The position numbers and the translations under genes were made by a program. The notes below the pieces were generated by a model. The model was not told the origin of the DNA and ran no database searches. It saw only the letters and a program-made list of their open reading frames with translations. From IMG/VR virus record IMGVR_UViG_3300026512_000002, positions 1 to 64,000 of that record: a DNA stretch of 64,000 nucleotides; one strand, written 5' to 3'. This document shows positions 4,035 to 53,731 of this stretch, one piece after another; position 1 is the stretch's first letter, and the number at the start of each line of letters is the position of its first letter.

Positions 4035-7000
4035 ATGGTAAGAGAAAAAGTTCGTGGATTAAAAAGGCGTGAAATTCGAGATATTAAACTTTATATTTTA
4101 GCTAAAAAGATTAGTATTGATAAATTATCAAAACTGGTTAATATAAGCAAATATAGATTATCCAAATGTCTTAAATATGGAAACAACAAATTTACAATGT
4201 ATGAAATTTCCAATATTAAAAAAATTATTAATGATAATAACAATGAACAAATGAAAAGTGTGGAATTAAATAATAGTGATTTTTTTAAACAAAATATATC
4301 TGAAGAAATATGGAGAAGTAAATATAAAGCGGTTAAAGATAAAACAGTATTTGATACATTTGATAGGATTATCGGAACATTGTTTGACAATACTGATGAG
4401 TTTGATATAGTTATCGCATCAAAATTACGCAATATGATGCATGAGAACAGATTTTTACCTGCTGGCAGAATATTATCCAATACTGGTGATGACACTAAAC
4501 CTATTGCTAGTTTAATAAATTGTCTTGTTATGGAACAAATACCTGATTCTATGAATGGTATAATGAGTATTGCTAGAGAAGCTGCTTTAAGTCTTCAAAG
4601 AGGAAATGGTGTCGGTTATGACTTTTCATCGATAAGGCCTAAAGGTGCTTATGTAGCTGGTGTTGGTGCGGATACTAGTGGACCATTACCATTTATGGAA
4701 ATATTTAACACTATGGCTAAAACTATAATGTCTGCTGGTGGCAGAAGATCTGCTCAGATGGGAGTTATGGATATACATCATCCCGATATTGTAGATTTTA
4801 TTACATCTAAACAAAAAGAGGGTGTTCTGAAACAATTCAATTTATCTGTCAATATAACTAATGATTTTATGAACCAATTAAAATTATTCCAAAAAACTGG
4901 TGATAAAAAATATGAGTTATGGGAATTGTGGTTTTGGGTTAAATTATCACCAACAGATACTGTTCATAGAAGTAGAGTTAGTGTTATTAATAAAGGTGAA
5001 TTACCATATGATCTTAAACATAGAGATAATAATTATTTTGTATTTGATAAAACTCATATCGAAGTAAAATATGGTAATTGTTCTCATAATACTATTTATG
5101 AGAAAAAAGTTTTTAATATTATTAGAATTACAGAATTATGGGATATTATAATGCGTTCTACTTATGATTATGCTGAGCCTGGAGTATTGTTTTTAGATAG
5201 AGCAAATGAATATAATCTGCTAAAGAATTATGAAAATATTAGAGCTACAAATCCATGTGTTGTTGGGGATACGAAAGTTGCTGTTGTCAATAGAGGGGCT
5301 GTTACTATAAAAGAGCTTGCTGATAAAGGTGAGGATGTTATGGTATATGCATATGATAATGATCTTAACAGAAGAGTTGTTAAAAGAATGAGAAGGCCTA
5401 GATTAACTGGTGAAAATATTGGCGTGTATAAAATATTATTTAATTCTGGAGATAGTATAATAGTTACAGGTAATCATGAAATTTTAATGAGTAATGGTGG
5501 TTATGTTGAAGCTAAAGATTTAGAACGTGGTAGTAGCGTCCATGTGTCACAGATTAATTTTGATAAAACGTCTCATATCGAGTTTAATCCCAATGATTAT
5601 GATATTAAAGTCACTAGAGTTGATGATGAGGATGTTTCGTTTATAGAACGTACTTGTGAGCATTGTGGTAAAAGTTTCTGGGTGAGATATGACGAAAGAG
5701 AAAAAGCATTCTGTTCTGGTAAATGTTCCGATAGTTATACTGAAATTAAAAATGGTTGGAGGAACAATGTTAAATCTAGAGTAGATTATCAAAACATGGG
5801 TACCATGTTCGAATATTTGGTTGTTGATATAGAGTATGTTGGTACTAGAAATGTGTATAATGGTACTGTTGATGATGTTCATAATTTTTATGTTGTATTA
5901 GATGATAGTGATCCTAATAATGTTACTATGCTGAATAATATGCAGTGTGGTGAGCAAATATTACCATTTAATGGTGCTTGTTTATTGGGATCCATGAACC
6001 TTGTTAAGTATATTGATGGTGATAGTTTTAATTTTGCTAATTTTTATAATGATACTATTTTTGCTAATATTTTATTAGATAGGGTGGTTGAACGACATGG
6101 GTTAGCATTAACAGGACAAATTGCTGAAATAACTAGTAAACGAAGGCATGGTTTAGGTTTTACTGGATTAGGATCTATGTTCCATATACTAGGTATTGAT
6201 TATGGCAGTATTGAATCAATAGAAATGACTAGAAATATAAGTATGATTTTAGCATATGGTAGTTTAGTTGCTAATGCTAAGTTATCCAAGATTTCAGGAT
6301 CTTTTAAAATTGATAATATGAATAATTTTATTGAAGAATTTAATAATAGTAAATATTATACTCATCTTATAGATAATATTAAGAGTAGTGGGTTTGGTGA
6401 TCATATTATGAATGTTGATACGTTATTAAATATGGTCAATACATATGGTTTGAGATATTCACATGCTACATCAATAGCGCCTACTGGGACTATAAGTTTG
6501 GTTAGTAATAATGTTTCTAATGGTATAGAACCACCGTTTGCATCAGCATATAGTAGAAATGTTGTTGACGCAAACGATACTAGTATAAGTAAAACTGAAC
6601 GAATTATGGATTATGCATTTATGATGGCTTGGGAAAAATCCAACATGGATTATGATGAATTTCTTAAAGAATATAATATGAGTCATAAATTTGCTCAAGA
6701 TATATCACCTAGTGATCATATTGCTATTCAGGCTGCTGCTCAAGAATTTATTGATTCAAGTATTAGTAAGACTATAAACTGTCCCACTAATATGAAATTT
6801 GAGGATTTTAAAAATATATATTTGGAAGCATATGATAATAATTTGAAAGGTCTGACAACATTTAGGTTTAATCCTGAAGTTAGATCTGCTGTATTAATAA
6901 CAGATGACGATATGATGAATATGAATATAAAGATTATGTTTAAAGATGGTTCTAGTAAAATATATAAAGCTAGTGATCAAGTGGAATATAAAGGAAGAGT

Positions 7001-7037
7001 TGTGACAGCATATAATTTATACGATATGTATAAATAA
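4035..7037 (+). CDS. nrdJ: Adenosylcobalamin-dependent (class II) ribonucleotide reductase, intein-containing, with N-terminal HTH-like extension
   Basis: Motifs FLPAGRIL, SLINC, GxGVGYDFS, RRSAQM, FNLSV, AEPGVLF, ATNP[intein]CGEQ, ACLLGS, SIAPTGTISL, ISKTIN; followed by an NrdJb-type gene. Confidence 0.93.
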   Translation: MVREKVRGLKRREIRDIKLYILAKKISIDKLSKLVNISKYRLSKCLKYGNNKFTMYEISNIKKIINDNNNEQMKSVELNNSDFFKQNISEEIWRSKYKAVKDKTVFDTFDRIIGTLFDNTDEFDIVIASKLRNMMHENRFLPAGRILSNTGDDTKPIASLINCLVMEQIPDSMNGIMSIAREAALSLQRGNGVGYDFSSIRPKGAYVAGVGADTSGPLPFMEIFNTMAKTIMSAGGRRSAQMGVMDIHHPDIVDFITSKQKEGVLKQFNLSVNITNDFMNQLKLFQKTGDKKYELWELWFWVKLSPTDTVHRSRVSVINKGELPYDLKHRDNNYFVFDKTHIEVKYGNCSHNTIYEKKVFNIIRITELWDIIMRSTYDYAEPGVLFLDRANEYNLLKNYENIRATNPCVVGDTKVAVVNRGAVTIKELADKGEDVMVYAYDNDLNRRVVKRMRRPRLTGENIGVYKILFNSGDSIIVTGNHEILMSNGGYVEAKDLERGSSVHVSQINFDKTSHIEFNPNDYDIKVTRVDDEDVSFIERTCEHCGKSFWVRYDEREKAFCSGKCSDSYTEIKNGWRNNVKSRVDYQNMGTMFEYLVVDIEYVGTRNVYNGTVDDVHNFYVVLDDSDPNNVTMLNNMQCGEQILPFNGACLLGSMNLVKYIDGDSFNFANFYNDTIFANILLDRVVERHGLALTGQIAEITSKRRHGLGFTGLGSMFHILGIDYGSIESIEMTRNISMILAYGSLVANAKLSKISGSFKIDNMNNFIEEFNNSKYYTHLIDNIKSSGFGDHIMNVDTLLNMVNTYGLRYSHATSIAPTGTISLVSNNVSNGIEPPFASAYSRNVVDANDTSISKTERIMDYAFMMAWEKSNMDYDEFLKEYNMSHKFAQDISPSDHIAIQAAAQEFIDSSISKTINCPTNMKFEDFKNIYLEAYDNNLKGLTTFRFNPEVRSAVLITDDDMMNMNIKIMFKDGSSKIYKASDQVEYKGRVVTAYNLYDMYK
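5256..5945 (+). mobile_element. Mini-intein (230 aa) at the NP|CGE catalytic site of NrdJ
   Basis: Starts CVVGDT (block A), has VTGNH (block B) and VYNGTVDDVHNF (block F), ends ...NNMQ before Cys+1. No LAGLIDADG/HNH domain visible. Confidence 0.9.
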
Positions 7038-7784: not shown

Positions 7785-7901
7785 ATATATCTAGTAATAA
7801 GGTTATTAAACATATTTTAATAACCTTATTTTAAAGATAGTTGTTGTATGATAAAAAAAATTGTGGTTAAATTGGAATATTGAATAATATTGGGAGTTTT
7901 T

Positions 7902-8528
7902 ATGAAAATAGATGAATTAACTTTTATTACAGAATTTACAAAATATGTTACTATTAATCATCCTACTATAAGTTTGGATGTTGGTGATTTAGAAAATTAT
8001 AGCGATGATCTTATATTAACGTGTAGTGATATAATAGATTATTTTTATGGTAAACATGATCGTATACTTAGAGAATGGTGTGGGTCGAAACATGTTGGTG
8101 TGGTGGAGATTGTTAAAGATAATCCTAATGTTAAAACACCTGTTATGGGTGCTGTTGGTTCTGCTGGTTATGACATATATGCTACAGACGACACATATAT
8201 ACCACCATTTGAAAGAGTGCTTCTTGATACTGGTATCAAGCTGTCTATACCAAAAGGTTTTGAAATACAAGTTAGGCCTAGAAGTGGTTTAGCTTATAAA
8301 AAAGGGATCACTGTTTTAAATACACCTGGTACTATAGATGCCTATTATAAAGATAATGTTAAAATATTGTTAATGAACACTACATCTGAGCCAGTTTCTA
8401 TAAGTGAAAATGAACGTATAGCACAACTTGTATTAAAACCAGTTTATGAAATATATTTTAAAACAGTTACATCGTTTACAGATAAGACAGATAGAGGTGG
8501 TGGTTTTGGTTCTACAGGTGCCATATAG
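7902..8528 (+). CDS. dut: Trimeric dUTPase with ~65-aa N-terminal extension
   Basis: Motifs AGYDI, RPRSGL, GTIDAYY, ERIAQL, RGGGFGSTG. Confidence 0.95.
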   Translation: MKIDELTFITEFTKYVTINHPTISLDVGDLENYSDDLILTCSDIIDYFYGKHDRILREWCGSKHVGVVEIVKDNPNVKTPVMGAVGSAGYDIYATDDTYIPPFERVLLDTGIKLSIPKGFEIQVRPRSGLAYKKGITVLNTPGTIDAYYKDNVKILLMNTTSEPVSISENERIAQLVLKPVYEIYFKTVTSFTDKTDRGGGFGSTGAI

Positions 8529-11068: not shown

Positions 11069-11659
11069 TTAGTTAGTGGTTTTACCACTATTTTTTAAAT
11101 AAAAATGTTTATTGCATAATGGTATGTAGTTATAACCTATGGATATAATATCACCATCAGTTATAATATTACCATCAATATCTATTCTAGCATTTTGTTT
11201 AGCATTAACACCGCACCAACATTTAACAGGACCGATTTCAGATATTTCATCAGCTATTTCAAATATACGTTTAGTTCCTGAAAATAATTGTCCTTTAAAA
11301 TCTGTTTTTAGACCATATAGTAAAAATGTTATACTATCTACATTTGAGCTTATTTCATATATTTGATTAAGTTGATCGTTTGTTAAAAACTGTGCTTCAT
11401 CTATTATGACTAAATCATATTGTCTAGCTGGTATACCATCATCGATACTTTGTAATATGTTATAAATACCATCATTTTCGTTAATCATGTTACATTCAAC
11501 TTTCTGATCGCCAAATCTAGTATAAATATATTTACCATTTCTAGAATCTATAGATGGTTTTAATAAACATACTTTTAAAAAATCTTTATTTTTCCACCAT
11601 TTTAATAATACTTCTGCAGATTTTCCACTATTCGTAGTACCGTATTTAAATTTTATCAC
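11069..11659 (-). CDS. tdk: Thymidine kinase (type II)
   Basis: GTTNSGKS P-loop, KPSIDSR, IIDEAQF, YGLKTDF, Zn-lasso CWCG...YIPLCNKH; GTG start after GGAGG. Confidence 0.93.
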   Translation of the reverse strand: MIKFKYGTTNSGKSAEVLLKWWKNKDFLKVCLLKPSIDSRNGKYIYTRFGDQKVECNMINENDGIYNILQSIDDGIPARQYDLVIIDEAQFLTNDQLNQIYEISSNVDSITFLLYGLKTDFKGQLFSGTKRIFEIADEISEIGPVKCWCGVNAKQNARIDIDGNIITDGDIISIGYNYIPLCNKHFYLKNSGKTTN

Positions 11660-11930
11660 TTTAACCTCCACTATAAAGAAAATCAAATATATGTTTAATT
11701 AGAACATATATCTTAAAAATGTTATAAATATTTTTATCATAATATATAAGATGTGTCAAGTTTAATATATATGTATATGTGATAATAGTTTAGTATTATA
11801 GTATTTATATATATTATATGTATATATTACATAAATGTAATAGGTGTTCCGGAAATAGTATGGGTTTTATTTTTTTTTGAAAAAAAGGTGGAAATCACAA
11901 CATAGTATTAAATATGTTAGTGGGAATATT

Positions 11931-13725: not shown

Positions 13726-13765
13726 AATCGTAATATTGATGATCATAAATATATATTATAATAAT

Positions 13766-14112
13766 AAGTTATTTAATAATGAATCGTGCATTGGCAAGTG
13801 TTTCCGGCGGTTCATAGCATAGAATGCTACTTATAGGAAACAACACACATTTGTGTGTTCCATTGTAAAGTTGTAGCTCTGGTAGGAAGGAGCAGTGAGC
13901 GGACATTGTGTGTCGAAACATGTCGCGGCTCTTGGTAGAAATACCAGCGGTAATCAATCCGTCAGAACACGTAAACATGGCTGACTACCATGATTGCTGG
14001 AGTTGCTATCCTAAAAGCAACTCTTGAGTAAATATATACAACCCTATCTGCGTTTGCGATAGGGTTGTATATCATTAAGAAAAGAGGTTGATCCCCTCTT
14101 TTCTTTTTTTTT
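13766..14112 (+). ncRNA. Putative structured early ncRNA (~350 nt)
   Basis: TATATTAT at 13752; GC-enriched; helices include a perfect 15-bp stem 14034-14048/14058-14072; terminator AAGAAAAGAGG/CCTCTTTTCTT plus T-tract. Confidence 0.65.
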
Positions 14113-14219
14113 GATTATGGACGACATATGTTGAAATCATTTTCAATTATATATTATAGTAATAGTTAATGTGTTTATCATACAATATGGTATGATATAA
14201 TATTTATATTGGAGGAAAT

Positions 14220-19293: not shown

Positions 19294-19342
19294 GGAGCTA
19301 ATAGTCAGGTTCCTATAATCGTATATATATGTATTACATATA

Positions 19343-19357
19343 TATATTATACTATTG
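19343..19357 (+). promoter_or_regulatory. Early (virion-RNAP-type) promoter YATATTAN-N6-G
   Basis: TATATTAT-actatt-G. The same motif with G at +7 occurs at 18315, 18842, 22395(-), 28699, 29516, ~43317, 51179 and ~62530. Confidence 0.65.
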
Positions 19358-20237
19358 TATGGCGGAAATATTTTACGAAACGTCAATACTATGGGAAAGC
19401 GTATCCCTAAAAAAAACAGGCCGCACTGGCGTACCAGGAACACCAAGTAGAGATCTTGGTCAACAAAAAAATCCGTTTGGCCAACGAAAATGATCCATGT
19501 TGTCTGGGAGTATTAGTATGCTCCATTGAAGGACAGTCTCTGGTGATAATGGCAAAAGGTCGAAAGGCCTGGAAAGAAGACGAAATTCGTAACAATGTCT
19601 AAGATAATGGCATTGGGGTATAAAGGGCGGTGGCCTGGAAGTCCTACGATATAAGTCTTTTTTACATAGGTGTATCTTTGATATATTTATGTAACGCTTT
19701 TTCCGTTCAAATGATGAGAAAAGCTATGCTTAATGGCGAAAGCCAAAAAGTAAGCTTTAAGATCATCAATATTGATCGGGTGAAGCAACTCCTACATAAT
19801 AATGATTGGACAAGTGCCATTGGGCACGAAGATGTCGCAATCATTGTTTCTAAAGAATTGGGAATGGAGGTTAAACATAACCGAATTTCCCATTCTTTAG
19901 AAAAGGAGGATGTCTTGATTTTAAGGCAGTATTTCGGAGGGCGTTTGCCCGAAGGAACTACTACCTTAAATGAAGATCAGCTCAAGTTATTGAGCTGGGT
20001 AGAAATTACTCTTAGCAAGTAATTTCTATTTATCCTTCTAAGCTAACAGTTTAATTCGGTTTGACTAACCGAAGTATATTGTTAGTAGGAGTGGAAACAA
20101 AAAAACCTAATAGGTCGGCCAGGTAGGAATGGCCGTTGACTAGACATAGTCTTAAAGAGAGTTAGTCACTCTCAATATTCCGATCCATCAAAAAAAAACA
20201 CCACCCGTTCTGGGTGGTGTTACTAATCCTTTTTTTT
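19357..20237 (+). other. Highly structured early transcript enclosing acrIII-1 (~320-nt 5' and ~200-nt 3' folded regions)
   Basis: Early promoter, continuous helices, 5'/3' end pairing (19359-19372 with 20174-20188), terminator AACACCACCC/GGGTGGTGTT. Confidence 0.7.
19678..20022 (+). CDS. acrIII-1: AcrIII-1 viral ring nuclease (DUF1874; degrades cA4, anti-type III CRISPR)
   Basis: MIYLCNAFSVQM, SAIGH (catalytic His), NRI, LEKED and GGRLPEG match the SIRV1 gp29/STIV B116 family; TTG start after AGGTG. Confidence 0.9.
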   Translation: MIYLCNAFSVQMMRKAMLNGESQKVSFKIINIDRVKQLLHNNDWTSAIGHEDVAIIVSKELGMEVKHNRISHSLEKEDVLILRQYFGGRLPEGTTTLNEDQLKLLSWVEITLSK

Positions 20238-20276
20238 ATCATTAAACAATCTATTAATACATTATATAGGATTAAT

Positions 20277-22381: not shown

Positions 22382-22473
22382 AATGATATAATATATGTTT
22401 GAATGTATTATATATACGATTTTTTTATTTACTATATTAAACAATTTATTAATGAAACTATGAGGTGTATGAA

Positions 22474-23454
22474 ATGGAAAAGTATAAAGGTTTGGTAATA
22501 GAAGGCGGTGGTGCCAGAGGTATTGTTTATGGTGGAGCATTACAGGCTATGGGAAAAAAAGGTGTATTGGGAAATATAATACATTATATGGGGACATCTG
22601 TAGGATCGATAACCGCATTGATGTTGGTATTGGGATATACTCCTCAAGAAATTGTTATTAAAACGGTTAATTTGCGAAGTGATGATATATTGAAAAAAGA
22701 TTTTTTTTTCTATATAAACGATGCTAAGAACTCGGAAAATGTTTTTAGTATTGCTAAATATATCATGTTAGGGTTAACCATAGGTTTATTTAGGGTTCCT
22801 GTGAATTTAATACATTTATTTTTTTTTGAAAATGGTTATTATGATAATGCTCCGTTGCGAAAATGGATTGAGAAATTGTTAGTCGATAAAGGTTTCGATA
22901 AAGATACTTCATTTAAAACAATATGGGAAAAAACTGGAAAAAAATTATATATTACAACAACTAATTGGGACCGAGAATATGTTAGAGTTTTTAGTGTTGA
23001 TGATGACAATGTCTCTGTATTAGATGCTGTTATGATCAGTGTATCTATACCCTATTTTTTTAGATCTGTAAATATAGGCGGTGAAAGATATGTTGACGGT
23101 GGTTTAGTGGCTAATTATAATATAGATTATTTATCTGATAATAATATTATAAATGCTAAGGATATAATAGGTTTACGTGTTGATGATAAATCTGAAATAG
23201 CTGGATTCAATGAAGGAAAATTATTTAAAGTTAAAAAGAAAAAAAAGAATTTTTTACAAAGTTTAATTAATACTATAGATATCATGTATGCTGGTGCCAA
23301 TACTCCTACATTGAGAGGAAAACATGAGCAAACAACAATACGATTATCTGATCACGGTATAGGGGTTGTTGATTTTTCAATGAATAAAGAAAAAAAACTA
23401 TATTATAGTGATTTGGGATATATTGATTTTTCAAACAAATATAAACATCAATAA
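22474..23454 (+). CDS. Patatin-like phospholipase
   Basis: GGGARG oxyanion loop, GTSVG nucleophile elbow, SVSIP, DGG catalytic Asp. Confidence 0.92.
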   Translation: MEKYKGLVIEGGGARGIVYGGALQAMGKKGVLGNIIHYMGTSVGSITALMLVLGYTPQEIVIKTVNLRSDDILKKDFFFYINDAKNSENVFSIAKYIMLGLTIGLFRVPVNLIHLFFFENGYYDNAPLRKWIEKLLVDKGFDKDTSFKTIWEKTGKKLYITTTNWDREYVRVFSVDDDNVSVLDAVMISVSIPYFFRSVNIGGERYVDGGLVANYNIDYLSDNNIINAKDIIGLRVDDKSEIAGFNEGKLFKVKKKKKNFLQSLINTIDIMYAGANTPTLRGKHEQTTIRLSDHGIGVVDFSMNKEKKLYYSDLGYIDFSNKYKHQ

Positions 23455-43149: not shown

Positions 43150-43360
43150 TATAATGTTAATAATAGGATATTGTGGATATGTTTGAAATAATAAATGTTA
43201 TAATAAAAAAACCTGTTTCAGGTAACACTTTGTCAGAGGCACTACAAAACGGTGTTGACAATATAAAGGAAAAGTAAATAACCTCGTTCTTCGTAATCTA
43301 AATACCATATCGAGTATATATTATATTTAGGTATGCTAGTATTATTTATAGGAGAAGAAT

Positions 43361-43981
43361 ATGGGCAAGAAAAAAAACAGTACGAAAAAAACAATTGAAG
43401 AAATTTTCGCAGAACTTAAAGAACTCAGTTTCAATGAAAAAATTAAAATAACTATTACCGAAATGGGACAAGAAAAACCTTTAAAAGAATTAATATCTTT
43501 GCTACCGAATATATTCGGTAGCAAAATAGTTAAAGGTGGTTTATTCACTATAAAAAATAGAGTGAACAAATTAAAAATAAATACATTGGTACCAATATTA
43601 AGTGAACAGTTAAATCCTGGTGGTACAATTTTTGTATATTATTTAAAATCTACAAATAAACTTATGTTATTTGCTAATGGCCTAGATGCAGAACTATCTA
43701 AAGATAATGCAATATATAAATATTATGATATTACGAGCGATTTAAATATACCCGAATATATTATATTTATGGGTTTATTCGGAGACACTTTTAATGAAAA
43801 CGAAATATTGAGTTTACAACACAAATATAGCAATTATTTAAATTTGACTAAATCAGGTAATTCTCATATGCTTAAAATGACACCAGTAAAATATAAAGAA
43901 TTTATTACCGAGTTAGGTAGAAGTTTAAGTAGTCCAAAATATATAAAAATAATAGTAAGAGAAAAGAACGCTTTTGAATAA
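43361..43981 (+). CDS. Hypothetical early protein
   Basis: SD AGGAG; TATATTAT-N6-G upstream. Confidence 0.75.
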   Translation: MGKKKNSTKKTIEEIFAELKELSFNEKIKITITEMGQEKPLKELISLLPNIFGSKIVKGGLFTIKNRVNKLKINTLVPILSEQLNPGGTIFVYYLKSTNKLMLFANGLDAELSKDNAIYKYYDITSDLNIPEYIIFMGLFGDTFNENEILSLQHKYSNYLNLTKSGNSHMLKMTPVKYKEFITELGRSLSSPKYIKIIVREKNAFE

Positions 43982-49594: not shown

Positions 49595-50095
49595 ATGAAA
49601 GATGAAAGACGTTGTTTTACTAATAAAGAACTTGGAACCATTAAAGCTTTTATGGAAAAATATGAACTATCATGGACCAATTTTGGGGATATTTTAGGTA
49701 TATCACCACAAGTTATTAGTAGGTATGTTAAACTTAAACAACACATCCCAGCCAGTGTTGTAGAACGAATATTTAATAGTATCGAAATATACGACATAAC
49801 TATGTCATATTCTGAACAGGATAATAGTGTGGTTGCCAATAAACAAAGTTATATTATTAGTAATAATATTGCCAAGGAAATTGATGGTTATTTTAAGAAC
49901 CAACTTTATAAAAAAAAGAAAAATCCCTACCAAGATATTGATAACGATTATCCAATCAATAGTGGTTATGATGATATTGACATAATCCTTAAAGATATGT
50001 TTTGTTTAAAAAAGAAAATGTCACATATGATAAAAGAATGTGGTGATAAATATGATAAATTGATAGATTTGTATGAAGGTATATTTGAAAGTTGA
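49595..50095 (+). CDS. XRE-type HTH protein
   Basis: LSWTNFGDILGISPQVISRY...P helix-turn-helix. Confidence 0.7.
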   Translation: MKDERRCFTNKELGTIKAFMEKYELSWTNFGDILGISPQVISRYVKLKQHIPASVVERIFNSIEIYDITMSYSEQDNSVVANKQSYIISNNIAKEIDGYFKNQLYKKKKNPYQDIDNDYPINSGYDDIDIILKDMFCLKKKMSHMIKECGDKYDKLIDLYEGIFES

Positions 50096-50195
50096 TCTGA
50101 TGATTAAAATCAGTATACTTTATTATAACTATATTTATATTCTGTTTCATAAATTAAAATATAATTTAAATACATATTATGTTGGTAACAATCAT

Positions 50196-50606
50196 CTATT
50201 GCGTTTTATAATACTTGGTTGTTTTTGAATTATTACGTTCATTATAGTATTTATTGTAATTTTCAATACTTTTAGAAATAGTTTTGAATTTAGCTAGTAC
50301 ACTTATAATATCAAAACCTATATCAGTAAATCTATCATAATCACACAATATGTATATTTTTTTCAGATCATTGCATTTAACATGGTATTTTTTAGCTATA
50401 CCACATTTCATACTACCTACAATAGTTTTAGTGAGTTCTGTTATTATTTTTTTTTCATCATCAGTTAATTTGGGCAATCTAGTTAAATTAGGTATATCTT
50501 CTTTAAGATATATGTTTTTATAAACAGTTTTTTCAACAATTTTTGGTTTGCAACATGCTGAAGACATTAACAATATACCTGTAATAGTTACGAATATTTT
50601 AAACAT
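50196..50606 (-). CDS. Lipoprotein, o-spanin candidate
   Basis: MFKIFVTITGILLMSSA|C lipobox; start overlaps the stop of the upstream gene (TAATG). Confidence 0.6.
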   Translation of the reverse strand: MFKIFVTITGILLMSSACCKPKIVEKTVYKNIYLKEDIPNLTRLPKLTDDEKKIITELTKTIVGSMKCGIAKKYHVKCNDLKKIYILCDYDRFTDIGFDIISVLAKFKTISKSIENYNKYYNERNNSKTTKYYKTQ

Positions 50607-50959
50607 TAACAATCTCCTTTTTCACAATCTTCTATTCGTTTACTCATAGCTTCTGAAAAACGATATCTAGCTTCAACAACGCTATCGTCACCAGTATCAA
50701 TATTGTCAGATATTGTTCTATTCACAGCAGCAACTTTAGTGTTCTGATGTATTAGAAGTAGTGTTGTTTTAATATTTTCGTTATTAACACTCATTAAGCG
50801 TTTATTTGAATCAACTAATTGTATTATACGGTTTTCTAATTTAGCTATTTCCTTATTTTTTTTCTTATATTTTAAATATAAACGCACTAATCCTAACAGT
50901 GTTATTAATGCAACAATATATTTTCCCCAAGTGTATATTTTTCTTATCATATTAAACAT
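50606..50959 (-). CDS. i-spanin candidate
   Basis: Single N-terminal TM helix, coiled coil, C-terminal Cys; directly upstream of the lipoprotein. Confidence 0.6.
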   Translation of the reverse strand: MFNMIRKIYTWGKYIVALITLLGLVRLYLKYKKKNKEIAKLENRIIQLVDSNKRLMSVNNENIKTTLLLIHQNTKVAAVNRTISDNIDTGDDSVVEARYRFSEAMSKRIEDCEKGDC

Positions 50960-50971
50960 GTTGTCTCCTAT

Positions 50972-51109
50972 TTATCCATTTAAAATAGCTTTATCTGTTT
51001 TTTTGTTTTTCTTATCCTCTTCAGAACATTCTTTAAGATAATCTTCTAATATTAAATTGTTATCGTGTAAAACTTTAATATCTTGGTTATTCTTTTTTTG
51101 ATTACTCAT
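50972..51109 (-). CDS. 45-aa charged protein, absent from the ORF track
   Basis: SD AAGGAG; MSNQKKNNQDIKVLHDNNLILEDYLKECSEEDKKTKKTDKAILNG. Confidence 0.65.
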   Translation of the reverse strand: MSNQKKNNQDIKVLHDNNLILEDYLKECSEEDKKNKKTDKAILNG

Positions 51110-51192
51110 AATATACTCCTTTATGAAATTTATAATATTGTCATTGTTATTGTTAAGTATATAGAATTATTTTAAATATATATTAATTAAAT

Positions 51193-52259
51193 GTTGGATA
51201 TTAGTAATGTTCATAGATTTCTCTATGAAGCATTATCTAGGCGATGTATGCTGCAGAGGGTGAAACCTCTTACGCTATCAATGTCGTTGAACATGATGTG
51301 GATAAGGAATTTATCATAACACAAAGTATCTGACCGTCAAGGAAATGACGTTAACACCCGCTAGGATAGCGTAAAGCCTATGGCTGTAAACGGTAACTGC
51401 CGCAGCAAGTCAGACCTAGTTGGTTATTGGCGTAACATATTCATCGAATATATTTGAATATGTTTATAGTTAGACACACATGAAGTGTGTATTATTGATA
51501 TGAAGACATCCCCATGTTTCCACAAATGGTGAGGTGTGTATACTTGAGATAATATGTATGGAATGGAATATGTTGAGTTATGTTTTGCTTGATATGTTCA
51601 TGTGTTAAACTATGAATATGTTCGTATATAGTATGAATATTGTTATTAGAAGGACAACTATAAACCCGTTCACGGTTGTAACGTGTAATCGTTCTACTTA
51701 TGTTTTGGTAGATACGAAGGTGTGAGAAAAGTAGGATATAAACTACTTCACCAACTCCAGATAATAATGGGGGGACATGCGGTCTTAAAACGTATCGGTT
51801 ATTTCAAATAACCGGGTTGGTAACCTAAAACCTGGCTAGCCGAAGCCAATGTATAAATGAAACTATCATATATTGTGTTATGATAGTGGATTATGGTAGG
51901 ATTGGGCACCCTTGAGTATTTTCGGATACTCTTAATTGTCTATGGTCATAAAAACAGGTCGAACATGCGACATGACCATGATGCTCTAACAAAGCATCAA
52001 GGCGGTTTTCATAACGCCATGTTTTATCCTCAGAAAATCGAGGGGACGGTGGTCCTTAAACATTTGACCAAGTCATTGGTCAAAGTATAAGTGAAGTTGT
52101 TGCTGGCGAGTAATGATTGATCAAATGGCAGGATTGGACATCCTTGAGTATTTTCGGATACTCTTAATTGTCTATGGTATGGGGTGCTAGTCAGGAGTAT
52201 TTGACTAACCATGGTGTTTCGCAAAACATCAAGACAATATGTCGAGCCCCCTTTTTTTT
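51193..52259 (+). ncRNA. Very large structured early ncRNA (~1.07 kb) with a duplicated 54-nt module
   Basis: TATATTAA-N6-G (51179-51193); no convincing ORF; GAAA and UUCG hairpins; repeat 51893-51946 vs 52125-52178; GGGG..CCCC plus T-tract end. Confidence 0.75.
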
Positions 52260-52272
52260 GTATTTACTACTA

Positions 52273-53487
52273 TTAATCTACAAAATCATTAATATTGACA
52301 TCAGTAACATTAACACTTAAATCATGAAAAGACTTCATCGATTTCAACATAATAACATTAGCTGGTTTAACAAAAATTAACCCAATATTCACAATACCTA
52401 ATTTATAATAAAGGTCGCCGGAACATACGTTACAATAACTCTCATTTCTACAATATAATGGTGATCGCATTTTTACAGTCTTATTTAAATATTTGTGTAT
52501 AATATCAGGGTCTAATCTAACTAATTTATTATTCTCCATAATATATCTGTATGTGTATTTATTTTGTTTTATATCAATTTCTGATATCATAACATCCATA
52601 TATGCTTTACTACCACAATCACTTTTTTTTTCACCTAAAACAGTTGATTGAAACGCTCCAGCATATAATTTTGCTAAATAACCACCAATAGCTGTATCCT
52701 TAGCTCTACCAAAACTACCAGCAACCATTAGATTAGCATGCTCGTGTATTTCATCTTTAGGTATCCCTTGTGATAAACTTTTCTTAGATATGAAAAATTT
52801 ATTTTTATCTTCTGGATCTATTATAATACCTCTCATTATATTAGTTACTTTATAATTGTTTTTAAAACTACCTCTGGCTCCTGATTCATAAATATCCATT
52901 GTCGGATTATCTTTAAATTTTTTTTTAGCCATATTTATTAGTTCTGTTTCAATCATATCGACTGTTTCGACAGGTCTGGTTTTTATCTCCTCAGAATATT
53001 TATCAAACAATTCTTTTTTTCTTTTTTCTATTTCTGGGTCATTTTTAGTCATATCGCTGGTCATTGGTGACGCTAATAAAATTACAATATTATAAGCTAA
53101 CCAATCTCTAGCATTGATATATTTCATATTGTCATCAAAACTTATTACATCATTAAGAAATGCTGTTGCCATATTATTATCAATTTTATATATAGCATCT
53201 TCATCAAGTATATTGTTAACATATCCATTAACTTTATAAAAACCTATGTCTCCAAATACCTCACTTATAAACATATTATATATGTACGAACCAACTGTAG
53301 TGGTTACTACACCCTTATCATTCTTATCAAACCTACTAAGTGGTATTGTCATCACTTGATCGGTATCAAATTTAGGAGGAACACCGTCTACTTCATTGAA
53401 CAAACTACTTAAAATTTCAAGCGTTATATCACTACCTTTTAAATTTAATAAATAATCAATACCCTCTTTATCAACTGTTTTATACAT
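52273..53487 (-). CDS. rpoC: Phage multisubunit RNA polymerase beta'-like subunit (C-terminal part), probably virion RNAP
   Basis: ESGARGS, bridge helix DTAIGGYL, DCG, RSPLYC...CNVC Zn site, trigger-loop SMKSFH; located in a late structural operon. Confidence 0.9.
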   Translation of the reverse strand: MYKTVDKEGIDYLLNLKGSDITLEILSSLFNEVDGVPPKFDTDQVMTIPLSRFDKNDKGVVTTTVGSYIYNMFISEVFGDIGFYKVNGYVNNILDEDAIYKIDNNMATAFLNDVISFDDNMKYINARDWLAYNIVILLASPMTSDMTKNDPEIEKRKKELFDKYSEEIKTRPVETVDMIETELINMAKKKFKDNPTMDIYESGARGSFKNNYKVTNIMRGIIIDPEDKNKFFISKKSLSQGIPKDEIHEHANLMVAGSFGRAKDTAIGGYLAKLYAGAFQSTVLGEKKSDCGSKAYMDVMISEIDIKQNKYTYRYIMENNKLVRLDPDIIHKYLNKTVKMRSPLYCRNESYCNVCSGDLYYKLGIVNIGLIFVKPANVIMLKSMKSFHDLSVNVTDVNINDFVD

Positions 53488-53731
53488 GAAGTACCTCAAG
53501 ATTGTTGTTGATAGATATTACACTATTTGATATATCATTATTTTTAGCAATATCGCTAAAAAATTTGTTAATCATATCTTTATCAAACACTTTATTTTTA
53601 AGAGTTTTTATTACAAACTCTTCTTTATCTATTAACGTATAAATATATGTGTTTACACCATCACATGTTACATTAATATAAGACAATTTATTTTGATTGA
53701 TTAAATAATTATTAGAACGGATCCATGCCAT
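53480..53731 (-). CDS. Hypothetical protein
   Basis: SD GAGG before MAWIRS; coupled to the RNAP gene. Confidence 0.65.
   Translation of the reverse strand: MAWIRSNNYLINQNKLSYINVTCDGVNTYIYTLIDKEEFVIKTLKNKVFDKDMINKFFSDIAKNNDISNSVISINNNLEVLHV

What the first reader, a model, noticed from the sequence alone, without database searches (positions are those of the whole stretch)
51193..52259. ~1.07-kb non-coding RNA in the GOLLD/ROOL size class with no recognisable family
Seen: the largest ORF-poor interval in the window, with early promoter and terminator, convergent on the RNAP gene. Hairpins include TTCATAGA/TCTATGAA, AGAGG-GTGAAA-CCTCT, AACATATTCA/TGAATATGTT, CGGTTATT/AATAACCG, ACTATCATA/TATGATAGT and TTTGACCAA/TTGGTCAAA. 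Known: very large phage ncRNAs (GOLLD, ROOL) exist and their functions are unresolved. Inference: a new large structured RNA class.
Basis: partly seen in the sequence, partly recalled or inferred. Interest (0 to 1): 0.8.

Follow-up and report, generated by a model that had tools for sequence, protein, structure and literature searches.

The report
Orphan one-kilobase structured phage RNA
An uncultivated hydrothermal-vent jumbo phage carries a 1,067-base stretch that cannot encode a protein and looks like a separately transcribed, heavily folded RNA of no known family, but it occurs in only one genome, so its fold and function remain unproven.

Summary
Window 51193-52259 lies in the largest ORF-free gap of the window. 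All six frames carry 20-36 stops of all three kinds. GC is 0.33-0.42 against 0.19-0.29 in the flanks, with G>C on the + strand. A 12/13 match to the AR9 early-promoter consensus puts G(+1) at 51193. The unit ends in C5U8, 14 nt before the convergent RNA polymerase beta-prime gene. Both halves fold better than shuffles (z about -5.6). A roughly 155-nt module is duplicated: a 40-nt core with a UUCG hairpin is identical in both copies, while the flanking hairpins differ in sequence but still pair, partly through G-U pairs that only the + RNA strand can form.

No Rfam family matches, even at E<=10. GOLLD, ROOL and group I and II introns are excluded as families.

No homologue was found in phage records, IMG/VR, metagenome or genome pattern scans, or in 1.3 Mb around the same gene in 82 related phages. 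No RNA run was listed.

The most likely reading is a stand-alone early non-coding RNA, probably a bivalent binding or assembly scaffold. Calling it a "class" is premature, because covariation across genomes cannot be tested and no transcript has been shown.

The parts
51174..51192 (+). Early-promoter-like element: a 13-mer matching the AR9 virion-RNAP consensus at 12/13 positions, followed by a 6-nt spacer. The predicted start G is 51193.
   Evidence: Consensus AAATATATATTAT-(6N)-G(+1) from PMC5312081. Match. Matches of this quality are enriched in ORF-free DNA: 8 of 13 lie in 14% of the window.
51193..52259 (+). Candidate non-coding RNA, 1,067 nt
   Evidence: No ORF over 65 aa. 20-36 stops in each frame. 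GC 0.33-0.42 with positive GC skew. MFE -328.6 kcal/mol. No Rfam family.
51193..51430 (+). 5' domain: a GC-rich (0.38-0.40) multi-branch. It is closed by 51250-51253/51403-51406 and 51271-51278/51366-51373, and includes hairpins 51212/51223 and 51256/51266 (loop GUGAAA).
   Evidence: Helices with pair probability >=0.9. z -5.61 for 51193-51764.
51433..51645 (+). AU-rich, long Y-shaped arm built from four copies of the wobble-self-complementary 9-mer GAAUAUGUU. Its helices are 15, 13, 8 and 7 bp long; the 13-bp helix has 5 G-U pairs.
   Evidence: for the helices; 4 of the 12 window copies lie here, against 2.2 copies expected in the whole window.
51693..51747 (+). Two short hairpins. The first carries the loop UAUGUUUU, the same loop as hairpin 51566-51599.
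   Evidence: repeat D2.
51769..52251 (+). 3' domain, enclosed by predicted long-range helices G5/C5, GACAUG/UAUGUC and GUCUU/AAGAC. It holds the two repeated modules.
   Evidence: z -5.64. The long-range pairs are single-sequence predictions.
51848..52001 (+). Module A: hairpins H1 (51862/51879), H2 (outer 51903/51937, inner UUCG hairpin 51914/51925), H3 (51942/51972 with inner 51958/51968) and H4 (51980/51993), followed by AAG.
   Evidence: Self-alignment 51847-52001 against 52081-52233: 70% identity over 157 nt, E 3.8e-18. Hairpin table.
52082..52233 (+). Module B: the same four hairpins at 52095/52109, 52135/52169 with 52146/52157, 52174/52208 with 52188/52202, and 52213/52224, followed by AAG.
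   Evidence: H1 of module B has 4 G-U pairs among its 10 pairs.
51893..51946 (+). 54-nt repeat core, copy 1. The last 40 nt are identical to copy 2 and contain a 7-bp stem capped by UUCG.
   Evidence: The 18-mer hairpin occurs only at these two places in the window, even with 3 mismatches allowed.
52125..52178 (+). 54-nt repeat core, copy 2 (94% identical to copy 1). One of the 3 differences turns a G-U pair of the outer H2 helix into A-U.
52247..52259 (+). C5U8 tail, the terminator-like 3' end, 14 nt before the stop codon of the convergent gene.
   Evidence: Sequence and pairing of the C-run with upstream G-runs. Not flagged by the consensus terminator scan.
52273..53499 (-). Flank: RNA polymerase beta-prime C-terminal piece, convergent with the RNA. 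It is complete at its C-terminus.
   Evidence: PF05000 and phrog_2962 (2.2e-66, profile positions 75-429 of 433). 35-38% identity to AR9/PBS1, Staphylococcus and Listeria jumbo phages.
50972..51109 (-). Flank: 45-aa ORF, divergent from the RNA, with AAGGAG a few bases upstream of its ATG. It is the first of three overlapping or abutting - strand ORFs (50196-51109).
   Evidence: GC skew is negative here, as in other - strand genes.

Best explanation
The stretch is a stand-alone gene for a large, highly structured non-coding RNA on the + strand.

Proposed working:
- Right after infection, the injected virion RNA polymerase transcribes it from an AR9-type early promoter, starting at G 51193.
- Transcription stops at the C5U8 tail, just short of the convergent late polymerase gene.
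- The RNA folds into a GC-rich 5' multi-branch, a long AU-rich arm, and a 3' domain holding two paralogous four-hairpin modules.
- Each module presents the same 40-nt motif: an internal loop plus a UUCG-capped stem.
- The proposed mechanism is action in trans as a bivalent scaffold or decoy. The two identical motifs would bind two copies, or a dimer, of a protein or RNA partner. Alternatively they would act as equivalent contact sites for self-assembly.

What is shown: non-coding status, composition, the promoter match, the U-tract, fold stability, the internal duplication, and hairpins that are kept while their sequences differ.

What is inferred: that it is transcribed, that it is one transcript, the long-range helices, and the whole mode of action.

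Rough split of belief: a functional structured RNA on the + strand, about 0.65. The scaffold or decoy mechanism specifically, about 0.3.
For: Non-coding:
- Stops of all three kinds in every frame.
- No Pfam hit for any small ORF.
- No convincing Shine-Dalgarno-led ORF.

Composition:
- GC is about 10 points above the genome. G>C on the + strand, the same sense-strand bias as the phage's genes show, while the flanking genes lie on the - strand.

Transcription signals:
- 12/13 match to the AR9 early consensus with correct spacing to G(+1).
- C5U8 at the end.
- No second early-promoter match inside the element.

Structure:
- z -5.6 for each half against a background mean of -1.0.
- 34% of bases sit in pairs with probability >=0.9.

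Selection on pairing:
- The duplicated modules are 70% identical.
- The 40-nt core is invariant.
- H1 differs at 8 of 9 aligned pairs, yet all stay paired. Four pairs changed on both sides. Four are A-U to G-U swaps.
- H4 has one two-sided and one one-sided change.
- The 4 G-U pairs of H1B and the 5 G-U pairs of helix 51566/51587 would be C-A mismatches on the - strand.

Assembly:
- The source run's contigs cover the stretch with no differing letters. They break only at the repeat core, which has about double depth.
Against: - There is only one genome, so no cross-species covariation and no R-scape-type test is possible.
- With two paralogues, the pair-count shuffles are uninformative (235/500), and the hairpin register is partly my own alignment.
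- No RNA run was listed, so transcription, the ends and the strand are unproven.
- Fold energies do not separate the strands once composition is allowed for: z is -7.3 and -4.2 on the - strand.
- The terminator is non-canonical.
- Other pieces of the window fold as well or better.
- The promoter rule is borrowed from a phage whose polymerase is only about 35% identical.
- Nothing identifies a binding partner.
Confidence: 0.5

Rival explanations
1. It is a DNA-level element rather than an RNA gene, for example a replication origin, possibly primed by a transcript from the early promoter as at T4 origins. Alternatively it is a set of protein-binding sites. The two identical 40-bp cores each hold an inverted repeat (6-bp half-sites, 6-bp spacer) that a dimeric helix-turn-helix protein could bind. 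The GAATATGTT repeats would act as iterons.
For: - Repeats: four GAATATGTT copies within 190 bp and two identical palindrome-bearing cores.
- A very AT-rich flank (GC 0.185 at 51000-51199).
- An HTH_3 protein is encoded 1.1 kb away at 49595-50095 (below the Pfam cut-off).
Against: - Origins are usually AT-rich, whereas this is the GC-richest ORF-free gap of the window.
- Homology between the two copies extends over about 155 nt, far beyond the palindrome.
- The hairpins flanking the core are kept through compensating changes and G-U pairs, which makes sense for RNA and not for duplex DNA.
- UUCG loops, strand-asymmetric G>C skew and a U-tract end all point to a transcript.
Confidence: 0.1
2. 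It is not one large RNA with its own function. Instead it is a regulatory transcription unit. Early transcription runs towards the late polymerase and virion operon and dampens it early in infection, by antisense RNA or polymerase collision. Alternatively it is a string of several shorter RNAs.
For: - The geometry is convergent, with only 14 nt between the U-tract and the stop codon of the - strand gene.
- The terminator is weak by consensus rules.
- Antisense transcripts are documented in AR9 (PMC5312081).
- The domains are separable in the fold.
Against: - Interference needs no 1 kb of GC-enriched, hairpin-dense sequence with conserved paralogous modules.
- There is no internal early-promoter match.
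- The only internal terminator-like site on the + strand is weak.
- No complementarity beyond chance to other parts of the window.
Confidence: 0.12
3. It is a decaying remnant of a mobile element or gene, such as an old intron, a homing-endonuclease cassette or a foreign pseudogene, with no present function.
For: - It is an orphan with no homologue anywhere searched.
- Related phages have other genes directly downstream of the same polymerase gene, so this stretch is an insertion or replacement relative to them.
- AR9-like phages are rich in group I introns: relatives' islands score 38.5 and 82.3 bits to RF00028.
Against: - No trace of a group I or II intron, even at E<=10, although the same search mode detects a relative's (L084) sub-threshold intron.
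- It does not interrupt a gene. The beta-prime piece is complete, and there is no + strand exon on either side.
- Frames are saturated with stops, yet the hairpins are intact and a precise promoter match is kept.
- Phage genomes rarely keep 1 kb of junk.
Confidence: 0.08
4. It encodes small peptides. Both repeat cores begin with ATG in the same frame, giving 65-aa and 21-aa ORFs with a shared hydrophobic N-terminus.
For: ORF 51893-52090 (65 aa) and the 21-aa ORF at 52125 share an 18-residue start. Small hydrophobic peptides occur in type I toxin systems (own knowledge).
Against: - All three differences between the two copies fall on second codon positions and change the amino acid, read directly from the repeat.
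- There is no Shine-Dalgarno motif before either ATG, while several of the phage's genes have one.
- No family match.
- Together they cover under a quarter of the element.
Confidence: 0.05

Closest known systems
GOLLD RNA (Rfam RF01998)
   Same: - Large (many members exceed 800 nt), hairpin-rich and non-coding.
- Encoded by phages and prophages, with function unknown (bioRxiv 10.1101/2024.12.08.627333).
- Built of a more and a less conserved half.
   Different: - No match to the covariance model, even at E<=10.
- No tRNA genes anywhere in the 64-kb window, whereas GOLLD is often near tRNA islands.
- The host phage is a lytic-type AR9-like jumbo phage from a vent, not a Lactobacillales prophage or lake sample.
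- GOLLD's multimeric cage is documented, whereas nothing is known here.
ROOL RNA (Rfam RF03087)
   Same: A phage- or prophage-encoded ornate RNA of unknown function, thought to act without a protein partner. It forms a homo-octamer.
   Different: No model match. No tRNA neighbourhood. This candidate is 1,067 nt. The secondary structure is unrelated.
Group I introns of AR9-like jumbo phages (Rfam RF00028)
   Same: They are also GC-enriched, ORF-free, strongly folded islands next to RNA polymerase genes in the same phage group. Some carry their own early promoter in AR9. I found such islands in relatives L034, L054, L084, L086 and L021.
   Different: - Those islands interrupt a gene. Two of them (L054, L084) sit at or just before the beta-prime D-F/Y-D-G-D motif.
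- Two of them match RF00028: L034 at 82.3 bits and L084 at 38.5 bits.
- This element lies between genes, on the strand opposite its neighbours, and gives no RF00028 hit at E<=10.
- nhmmer finds no similarity to them.
Multivalent decoy RNAs such as CsrB/RsmZ or 6S RNA (comparison of mode of action only; own knowledge)
   Same: These are stand-alone RNAs that present repeated or mimic binding sites and titrate a protein. Here, two identical 40-nt motifs sit in paralogous modules.
   Different: - No Rfam match to 6S or the CsrB/Rsm families.
- There are only two repeat units, and they are much larger.
- The partner is unknown.

Membership tests
GOLLD (RF01998) | Match to the family covariance model (conserved 3' region) | tested here: not met
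   No hit at gathering score in the window, nor at E<=10 on 50900-52500.
GOLLD (RF01998) | Frequent location next to tRNA genes in phages or prophages | tested here: not met
   ARAGORN finds no tRNA in the 64-kb window. Phage origin itself is met.
ROOL (RF03087) | Match to the family covariance model | tested here: not met
GOLLD/ROOL-like nanocage RNAs | RNA-only homo-oligomer held by kissing loops and A-minor contacts | not testable with these tools
   Needs SEC-MALS, native gels or cryo-EM of the transcript. Palindromic stretches exist (for example at 51835-51842, 52117-52124 and 52208-52215), but these are only leads.
Group I intron (RF00028) | Catalytic core recognised by the model | tested here: not met
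   No hit at E<=10. The same mode gives 38.5 bits (E 4.5e-8) for a relative's intron, and gathering mode gives 82.3 bits for L034.
Group I intron (RF00028) | Interrupts a host gene, with flanking exons on the same strand | tested here: not met
   The neighbours are on the opposite strand. The beta-prime piece aligns to the end of its profile.
Group II intron | Domain V/VI and D1-D4 models; often a reverse-transcriptase ORF | tested here: not met
   No Rfam hit. No ORF over 65 aa. No reverse transcriptase among the window's Pfam hits.
Type III antitoxin or CRISPR-repeat mimic RNAs | Tandem array of short (about 30-45 nt) repeats; a CRISPR-DR-like repeat | tested here: not met
   TRF finds no array. 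The two cores are 232 nt apart. No CRISPR-DR model hit. No toxin gene follows.
AR9-type early transcription unit | Promoter AAATATATATTAT-(6N)-G(+1) | tested here: met
   12/13 match with exact spacing and G at 51193. Whether this phage's virion polymerase uses the same rule is inferred from enrichment of the motif in ORF-free DNA.
AR9-type early transcription unit | Defined 3' end (intrinsic terminator) | tested here: inconclusive
   A C5U8 tail is present, but no compact stem precedes it. The scan did not flag it, and the stem partner is 60 or 473 nt upstream.
Structured non-coding RNA in general | Base pairs supported by covariation among independent homologues | tested here: inconclusive
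   No homologue exists to test. The only comparison is between the two internal modules: 100% of 40 cells are paired, against 30-52% when the partners are slid. The structure was derived from these same sequences, and the shuffles are uninformative.

The most novel reading that the evidence does not exclude
This is the first seen member of a new family of giant (over 1 kb) ornate phage RNAs. It would be made in the first minutes of infection by the injected virion polymerase of an AR9-like jumbo phage. Its pseudo-symmetric, internally duplicated architecture would let it either self-assemble into a higher-order RNA particle, as GOLLD and ROOL do, or trap a dimeric host factor, such as a defence or RNA-metabolism protein. 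It would be longer than the roughly 830-nt GOLLD RNA solved in the cited study.
Probability: 0.3. Interest if true: 0.8.

Novelty: new variant of a known kind. Interest (0 to 1): 0.58.

Why it matters
Very large structured RNAs that are neither ribosomal nor introns are rare. The few known ones (OLE, GOLLD, ROOL) turned out to form unexpected RNA-only assemblies, and their functions are still open.

A 1.07-kb candidate with a precise early promoter would give a new and differently timed example. [quoted passage not shown] It would come from a phage group, the AR9/PBS1-like jumbo phages, that runs its own transcription, which points to a role in host take-over.

The internal duplication is useful in practice. 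It gives two natural variants of the same module, which helps design probing, mutational and binding experiments even without homologues.

If it proves to be only a singleton with no stable transcript, it is a curiosity of one uncultivated genome.

Tried and rejected
1. Recoded or read-through gene: rejected. All three stop codons occur many times in all six frames.
2. Known RNA family: rejected. Rfam gave nothing at gathering score and nothing credible at E<=10. ARAGORN found nothing.
3. Group I intron: considered seriously, because GC-rich ORF-free islands near the polymerase genes of relatives turned out to be group I introns. Rejected here for lack of any core match, lack of exons, and no nhmmer similarity.
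4. Homologue searches that found nothing useful:
   - blastn of the whole element and of one module against 50,697 phage records.
   - An exact 27-mer and a stem-degenerate 24-base pattern in IMG/VR, which returned only this contig.
   - A degenerate pattern in metagenome contigs, which returned this contig plus a chance hit inside a collagen-like repeat of a coding gene (L009).
   - A 22-mer in GTDB genomes, which gave one hit inside a coding region of a Robiginitomaculum MAG with no surrounding similarity.
   - nhmmer and a covariance model of the module over 82 related loci, 1.3 Mb, and over the window.
5. Synteny: the closest relatives (44, 42 and 38% identical beta-prime) have ordinary genes where this element sits.
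6. Transcript evidence: no RNA run was listed. The two DNA runs hold the same phage with identical sequence, so they gave no variation to exploit.
7. Antisense target search within the window: chance-level matches only.
8. Strand call from folding energy: rejected as uninformative. The 57 kcal/mol advantage of the + strand equals the difference between the shuffled means.
Full report
**Source and setting**

The window is part of IMGVR_UViG_3300026512_000002, a 227.7-kb viral contig. The run that holds 99% of the element's sampled words is labelled a hydrothermal vent metagenome.

The gene to the right of the finding, 52273-53499(-), is the C-terminal piece of a split multisubunit RNA polymerase beta-prime (PF05000; phrog_2962 at 2.2e-66, aligned to the end of the profile). 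Its best database relatives are jumbo phages of Staphylococcus, Bacillus (AR9, PBS1) and Listeria, at 35-38% identity. Further right lie large virion proteins on the same strand.

To the left lie three small - strand ORFs (50196-51109), an HTH_3-like protein, an endolysin-like peptidase and a tail-fibre-like giant protein. So this is an AR9-like jumbo phage with no close relative. The nearest beta-prime in 5.8 billion proteins is 44% identical.

**Checking the observation**

- The interval 50960-52272 is the longest stretch of the window without an ORF of 70 aa or more. It also has the highest GC of all such gaps: 0.346 including the AT-rich promoter region, against 0.291 for the window.
- Inside 51193-52259 the longest ORFs are 65 and 64 aa. 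Each of the six frames of 51100-52300 has 20-36 stops, with TAA, TAG and TGA all present, so stop-codon reassignment cannot rescue a gene.
- The small ORFs have no Pfam match, and none has a convincing ribosome-binding site.
- GC is 0.33-0.42 inside and 0.19-0.29 outside. GC skew is positive on the + strand, whereas the flanking - strand genes give negative skew. The G-rich strand is therefore the + strand, as it is for the sense strand of the phage's genes.

**Transcription signals**

The AR9 early (virion polymerase) promoter consensus is AAATATATATTAT-(6N)-G(+1) (PMC5312081). Window 51174-51186 matches 12 of 13 positions.

The rule seems to apply to this phage. Of 13 sites with at most one mismatch in the 13-mer, 8 lie in the 14% of the window that is ORF-free. 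No second such site lies inside the element.

The 3' end is C5U8 at 52247-52259, 14 nt before the stop codon of the convergent gene. It is not a textbook terminator. The consensus scan did not flag it, and the C-run's partner is a G-run either 60 nt upstream (52181) or 473 nt upstream (51769). I therefore count the promoter as confirmed by analogy and the terminator as plausible but non-canonical.

**Fold**

The + strand MFE is -328.6 kcal/mol. The two halves give z = -5.61 (51193-51764) and -5.64 (51765-52259), with 0 of 100 shuffles as good. For 300-nt pieces spread over the window, the background is mean -1.0, sd 1.8 and 5th percentile -4.1. Pieces of the element score -4.2, -2.0, -5.2 and -3.1 on the + strand.

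The - strand also scores well (-7.3, -4.2). The + strand's 57 kcal/mol advantage is matched by the shuffles, so folding energy does not call the strand. In the partition function, 34% of bases sit in pairs with probability >=0.9.

The picture is:
- a GC-rich 5' multi-branch (51193-51430);
- a long AU-rich Y-shaped arm (51433-51645) made from four copies of GAAUAUGUU, a 9-mer that pairs with itself through wobble pairs. There are 12 copies in the window against 2.2 expected, and four of them are here;
- two small hairpins;
- a 3' domain (51769-52251) that the prediction closes with G5/C5 and two further helices.

**Internal duplication, the strongest internal evidence**

51847-52001 aligns with 52081-52233 at 70% identity over 157 nt (E 3.8e-18). 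Within it, a 54-nt core is 94% identical, and its last 40 nt are identical. The core holds a 7-bp stem capped by UUCG, which occurs nowhere else in the window even with three mismatches allowed.

Around the core, each copy has the same series of hairpins:
- **H1** is ACUAUCAUA/UAUGAUAGU in copy A and AGUUGUUGCU/AGUAAUGAUU in copy B. In the register set by the conserved flanks, 8 of 9 pairs differ and all stay paired. Four changed on both sides. Four are A-U to G-U swaps.
- **H2 outer helix** has one G-U to A-U change.
- **H3** keeps AUGGU/ACCAU and encloses a different inner hairpin in each copy.
- **H4** (GAUGCU/AGCAUC against GGUGUUU/AAACAUC) has one two-sided and one one-sided change.
- Both copies then continue with AAG.

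Four of the ten H1B pairs, and five of the thirteen pairs in helix 51566/51587, are G-U. On the - strand these would be C-A mismatches. This is the pattern expected if pairing in a + strand RNA is under selection.

The limits are plain. There are only two sequences. Part of the register is mine, since MAFFT gaps H1. The formal count is 100% of 40 cells paired, against 30-52% with slid partners, and its shuffle control is uninformative. The structure was also derived from these same sequences.

**Known families**

Rfam 15 gives no hit at gathering scores in the whole window. At E<=10 on 50900-52500 the only hit is a snoRNA model at E 6.5. GOLLD, ROOL, OLE, 6S, RNase P, tmRNA, group I and II introns and CRISPR repeats are thus not detected. 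There is no tRNA gene in the window. GOLLD and ROOL, by contrast, are often near tRNA islands (10.1101/2024.12.08.627333).

The intron possibility needed care. In 82 loci around the same polymerase gene in related phages, I found several GC-enriched ORF-free islands. They are similar to each other. In at least two loci (L054, L084) they sit at or just before the beta-prime D-F/Y-D-G-D motif. Two of them are group I introns by RF00028: 82.3 bits in L034 at gathering and 38.5 bits (E 4.5e-8) in L084 in E-value mode.

The same E-value mode finds nothing of the kind in the present element, and nhmmer sees no similarity to any of those loci. The element also interrupts no gene. It is therefore not an intron of the type common in this phage group.

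**Search for homologues**

None was found:
- blastn against phage records, for the whole element and for one module, the module at E up to 10;
- pattern scans of IMG/VR, which returned only this contig;
- a degenerate pattern in metagenome contigs, which returned this contig and a chance hit within a collagen-like coding repeat;
- a 22-mer in GTDB genomes, which hit once, inside a coding region of an alphaproteobacterial MAG with no further similarity;
- a covariance model of the module (R1), which found only the two copies in the window and nothing at E below 0.2 in 1.3 Mb of relatives.

The three closest relatives carry ordinary genes directly downstream of the polymerase gene. A second DNA run, from 2025, holds fragments of the same phage that are identical over the element. 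This shows persistence but gives no variation. No RNA run was listed.

**Interpretation**

The best reading is a stand-alone early non-coding RNA on the + strand. Because two paralogous modules keep an identical 40-nt motif while everything around it drifts, that motif is most likely a specific contact site present in two copies.

This suggests a bivalent scaffold or decoy for a protein or RNA partner, or two equivalent contacts for self-assembly. That last step is inference only.

The rivals are:
- a DNA-level element, either an origin or operator sites for the nearby HTH protein;
- a convergent regulatory transcription unit, or several shorter RNAs;
- a decayed mobile element;
- small peptides starting in the repeat cores. 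Here the three differences between the cores all fall on second codon positions and change the residue (read), and no ribosome-binding site precedes either ATG.

Each rival explains part of the picture. None explains the GC enrichment, the strand-specific wobble pairs and the maintained hairpins together.

**Verdict**

It is not a member of GOLLD, ROOL or any Rfam family. It is at present a singleton, so 'new class' is a hypothesis, not a finding.

Noticed in passing
window 13747-14115 (+): A second ORF-free, GC-rich unit (up to 0.43 GC). It has a perfect 13/13 AR9-type early-promoter 13-mer at 13747-13759, although +1 is A rather than G, then about 350 nt that fold strongly (z -5.4 on +, -9.5 on -), then a canonical stem plus T9 terminator near 14078-14115. 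There is no Rfam family at E<=10 beyond chance-level hits, and no similarity to the 1-kb element. It is probably another early small RNA.
   Followed up: partly
window 19338-20245 (+): A third GC-enriched early-promoter unit. The promoter match has G(+1) at 19357. A roughly 270-nt structured leader follows, with GAAA-capped hairpins (z -6.6). Then comes an ORF (19630-20022, phrog_5063, function unknown), a further structured tail, and a hairpin plus T-run at about 20200-20245. No Rfam intron or leader match of note.
   Followed up: partly
window 43501-43800 (-): An AT-rich piece (GC 0.257) inside or next to ORF 43361-43981 folds unusually well on the - strand (z -8.2, the strongest background outlier). 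An early-promoter-like site lies at 43312-43331.
   Followed up: no
L054:10947-11901, L084:12088-12704, L086:5468-6065, L021:11572-11980, L034:12058-12323: Related jumbo phages carry group I introns in their RNA polymerase genes. In L054 and L084 they sit at or just before the beta-prime D-F/Y-D-G-D motif, and L054 has two related copies. L084's intron scores below Rfam's gathering cut-off (38.5 bits), L054, L086 and L021 gave no hit at gathering score, and only L034 passes (82.3 bits). Routine Rfam annotation would therefore miss most of them.
   Followed up: partly
window 4035-7037 (+): Ribonucleotide reductase (barrel domain, 1.1e-100) with an intein-splicing-domain hit at residues 422-619. 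The hit is just below the Pfam cut-off. This is a likely intein-containing RNR.
   Followed up: no
window 7890-8528 (+) and 11069-11686 (-): A dUTPase / dCTP-deaminase-like protein and a thymidine kinase. AR9 and PBS1 have uracil-containing DNA. A dUTPase would be unexpected in such a phage (own knowledge), so this relative may not use uracil DNA, or the enzyme may have another role.
   Followed up: no
window 50168-50187 (+): An early-promoter-like 13-mer (1 mismatch, +1 = A) in the gap after the HTH gene. It points into the three - strand ORFs 50196-51109, so it would give antisense transcription if active.
   Followed up: no
window 51917-52178: In the source run, the Logan contigs break exactly at the two copies of the 54-nt repeat core. 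The 37-nt shared piece has about double depth (29 against 18), as expected for a true two-copy repeat rather than an assembly artefact.
   Followed up: yes
window 22465-23454 (+): A patatin-like phospholipase (5.9e-37) encoded by the phage.
   Followed up: no
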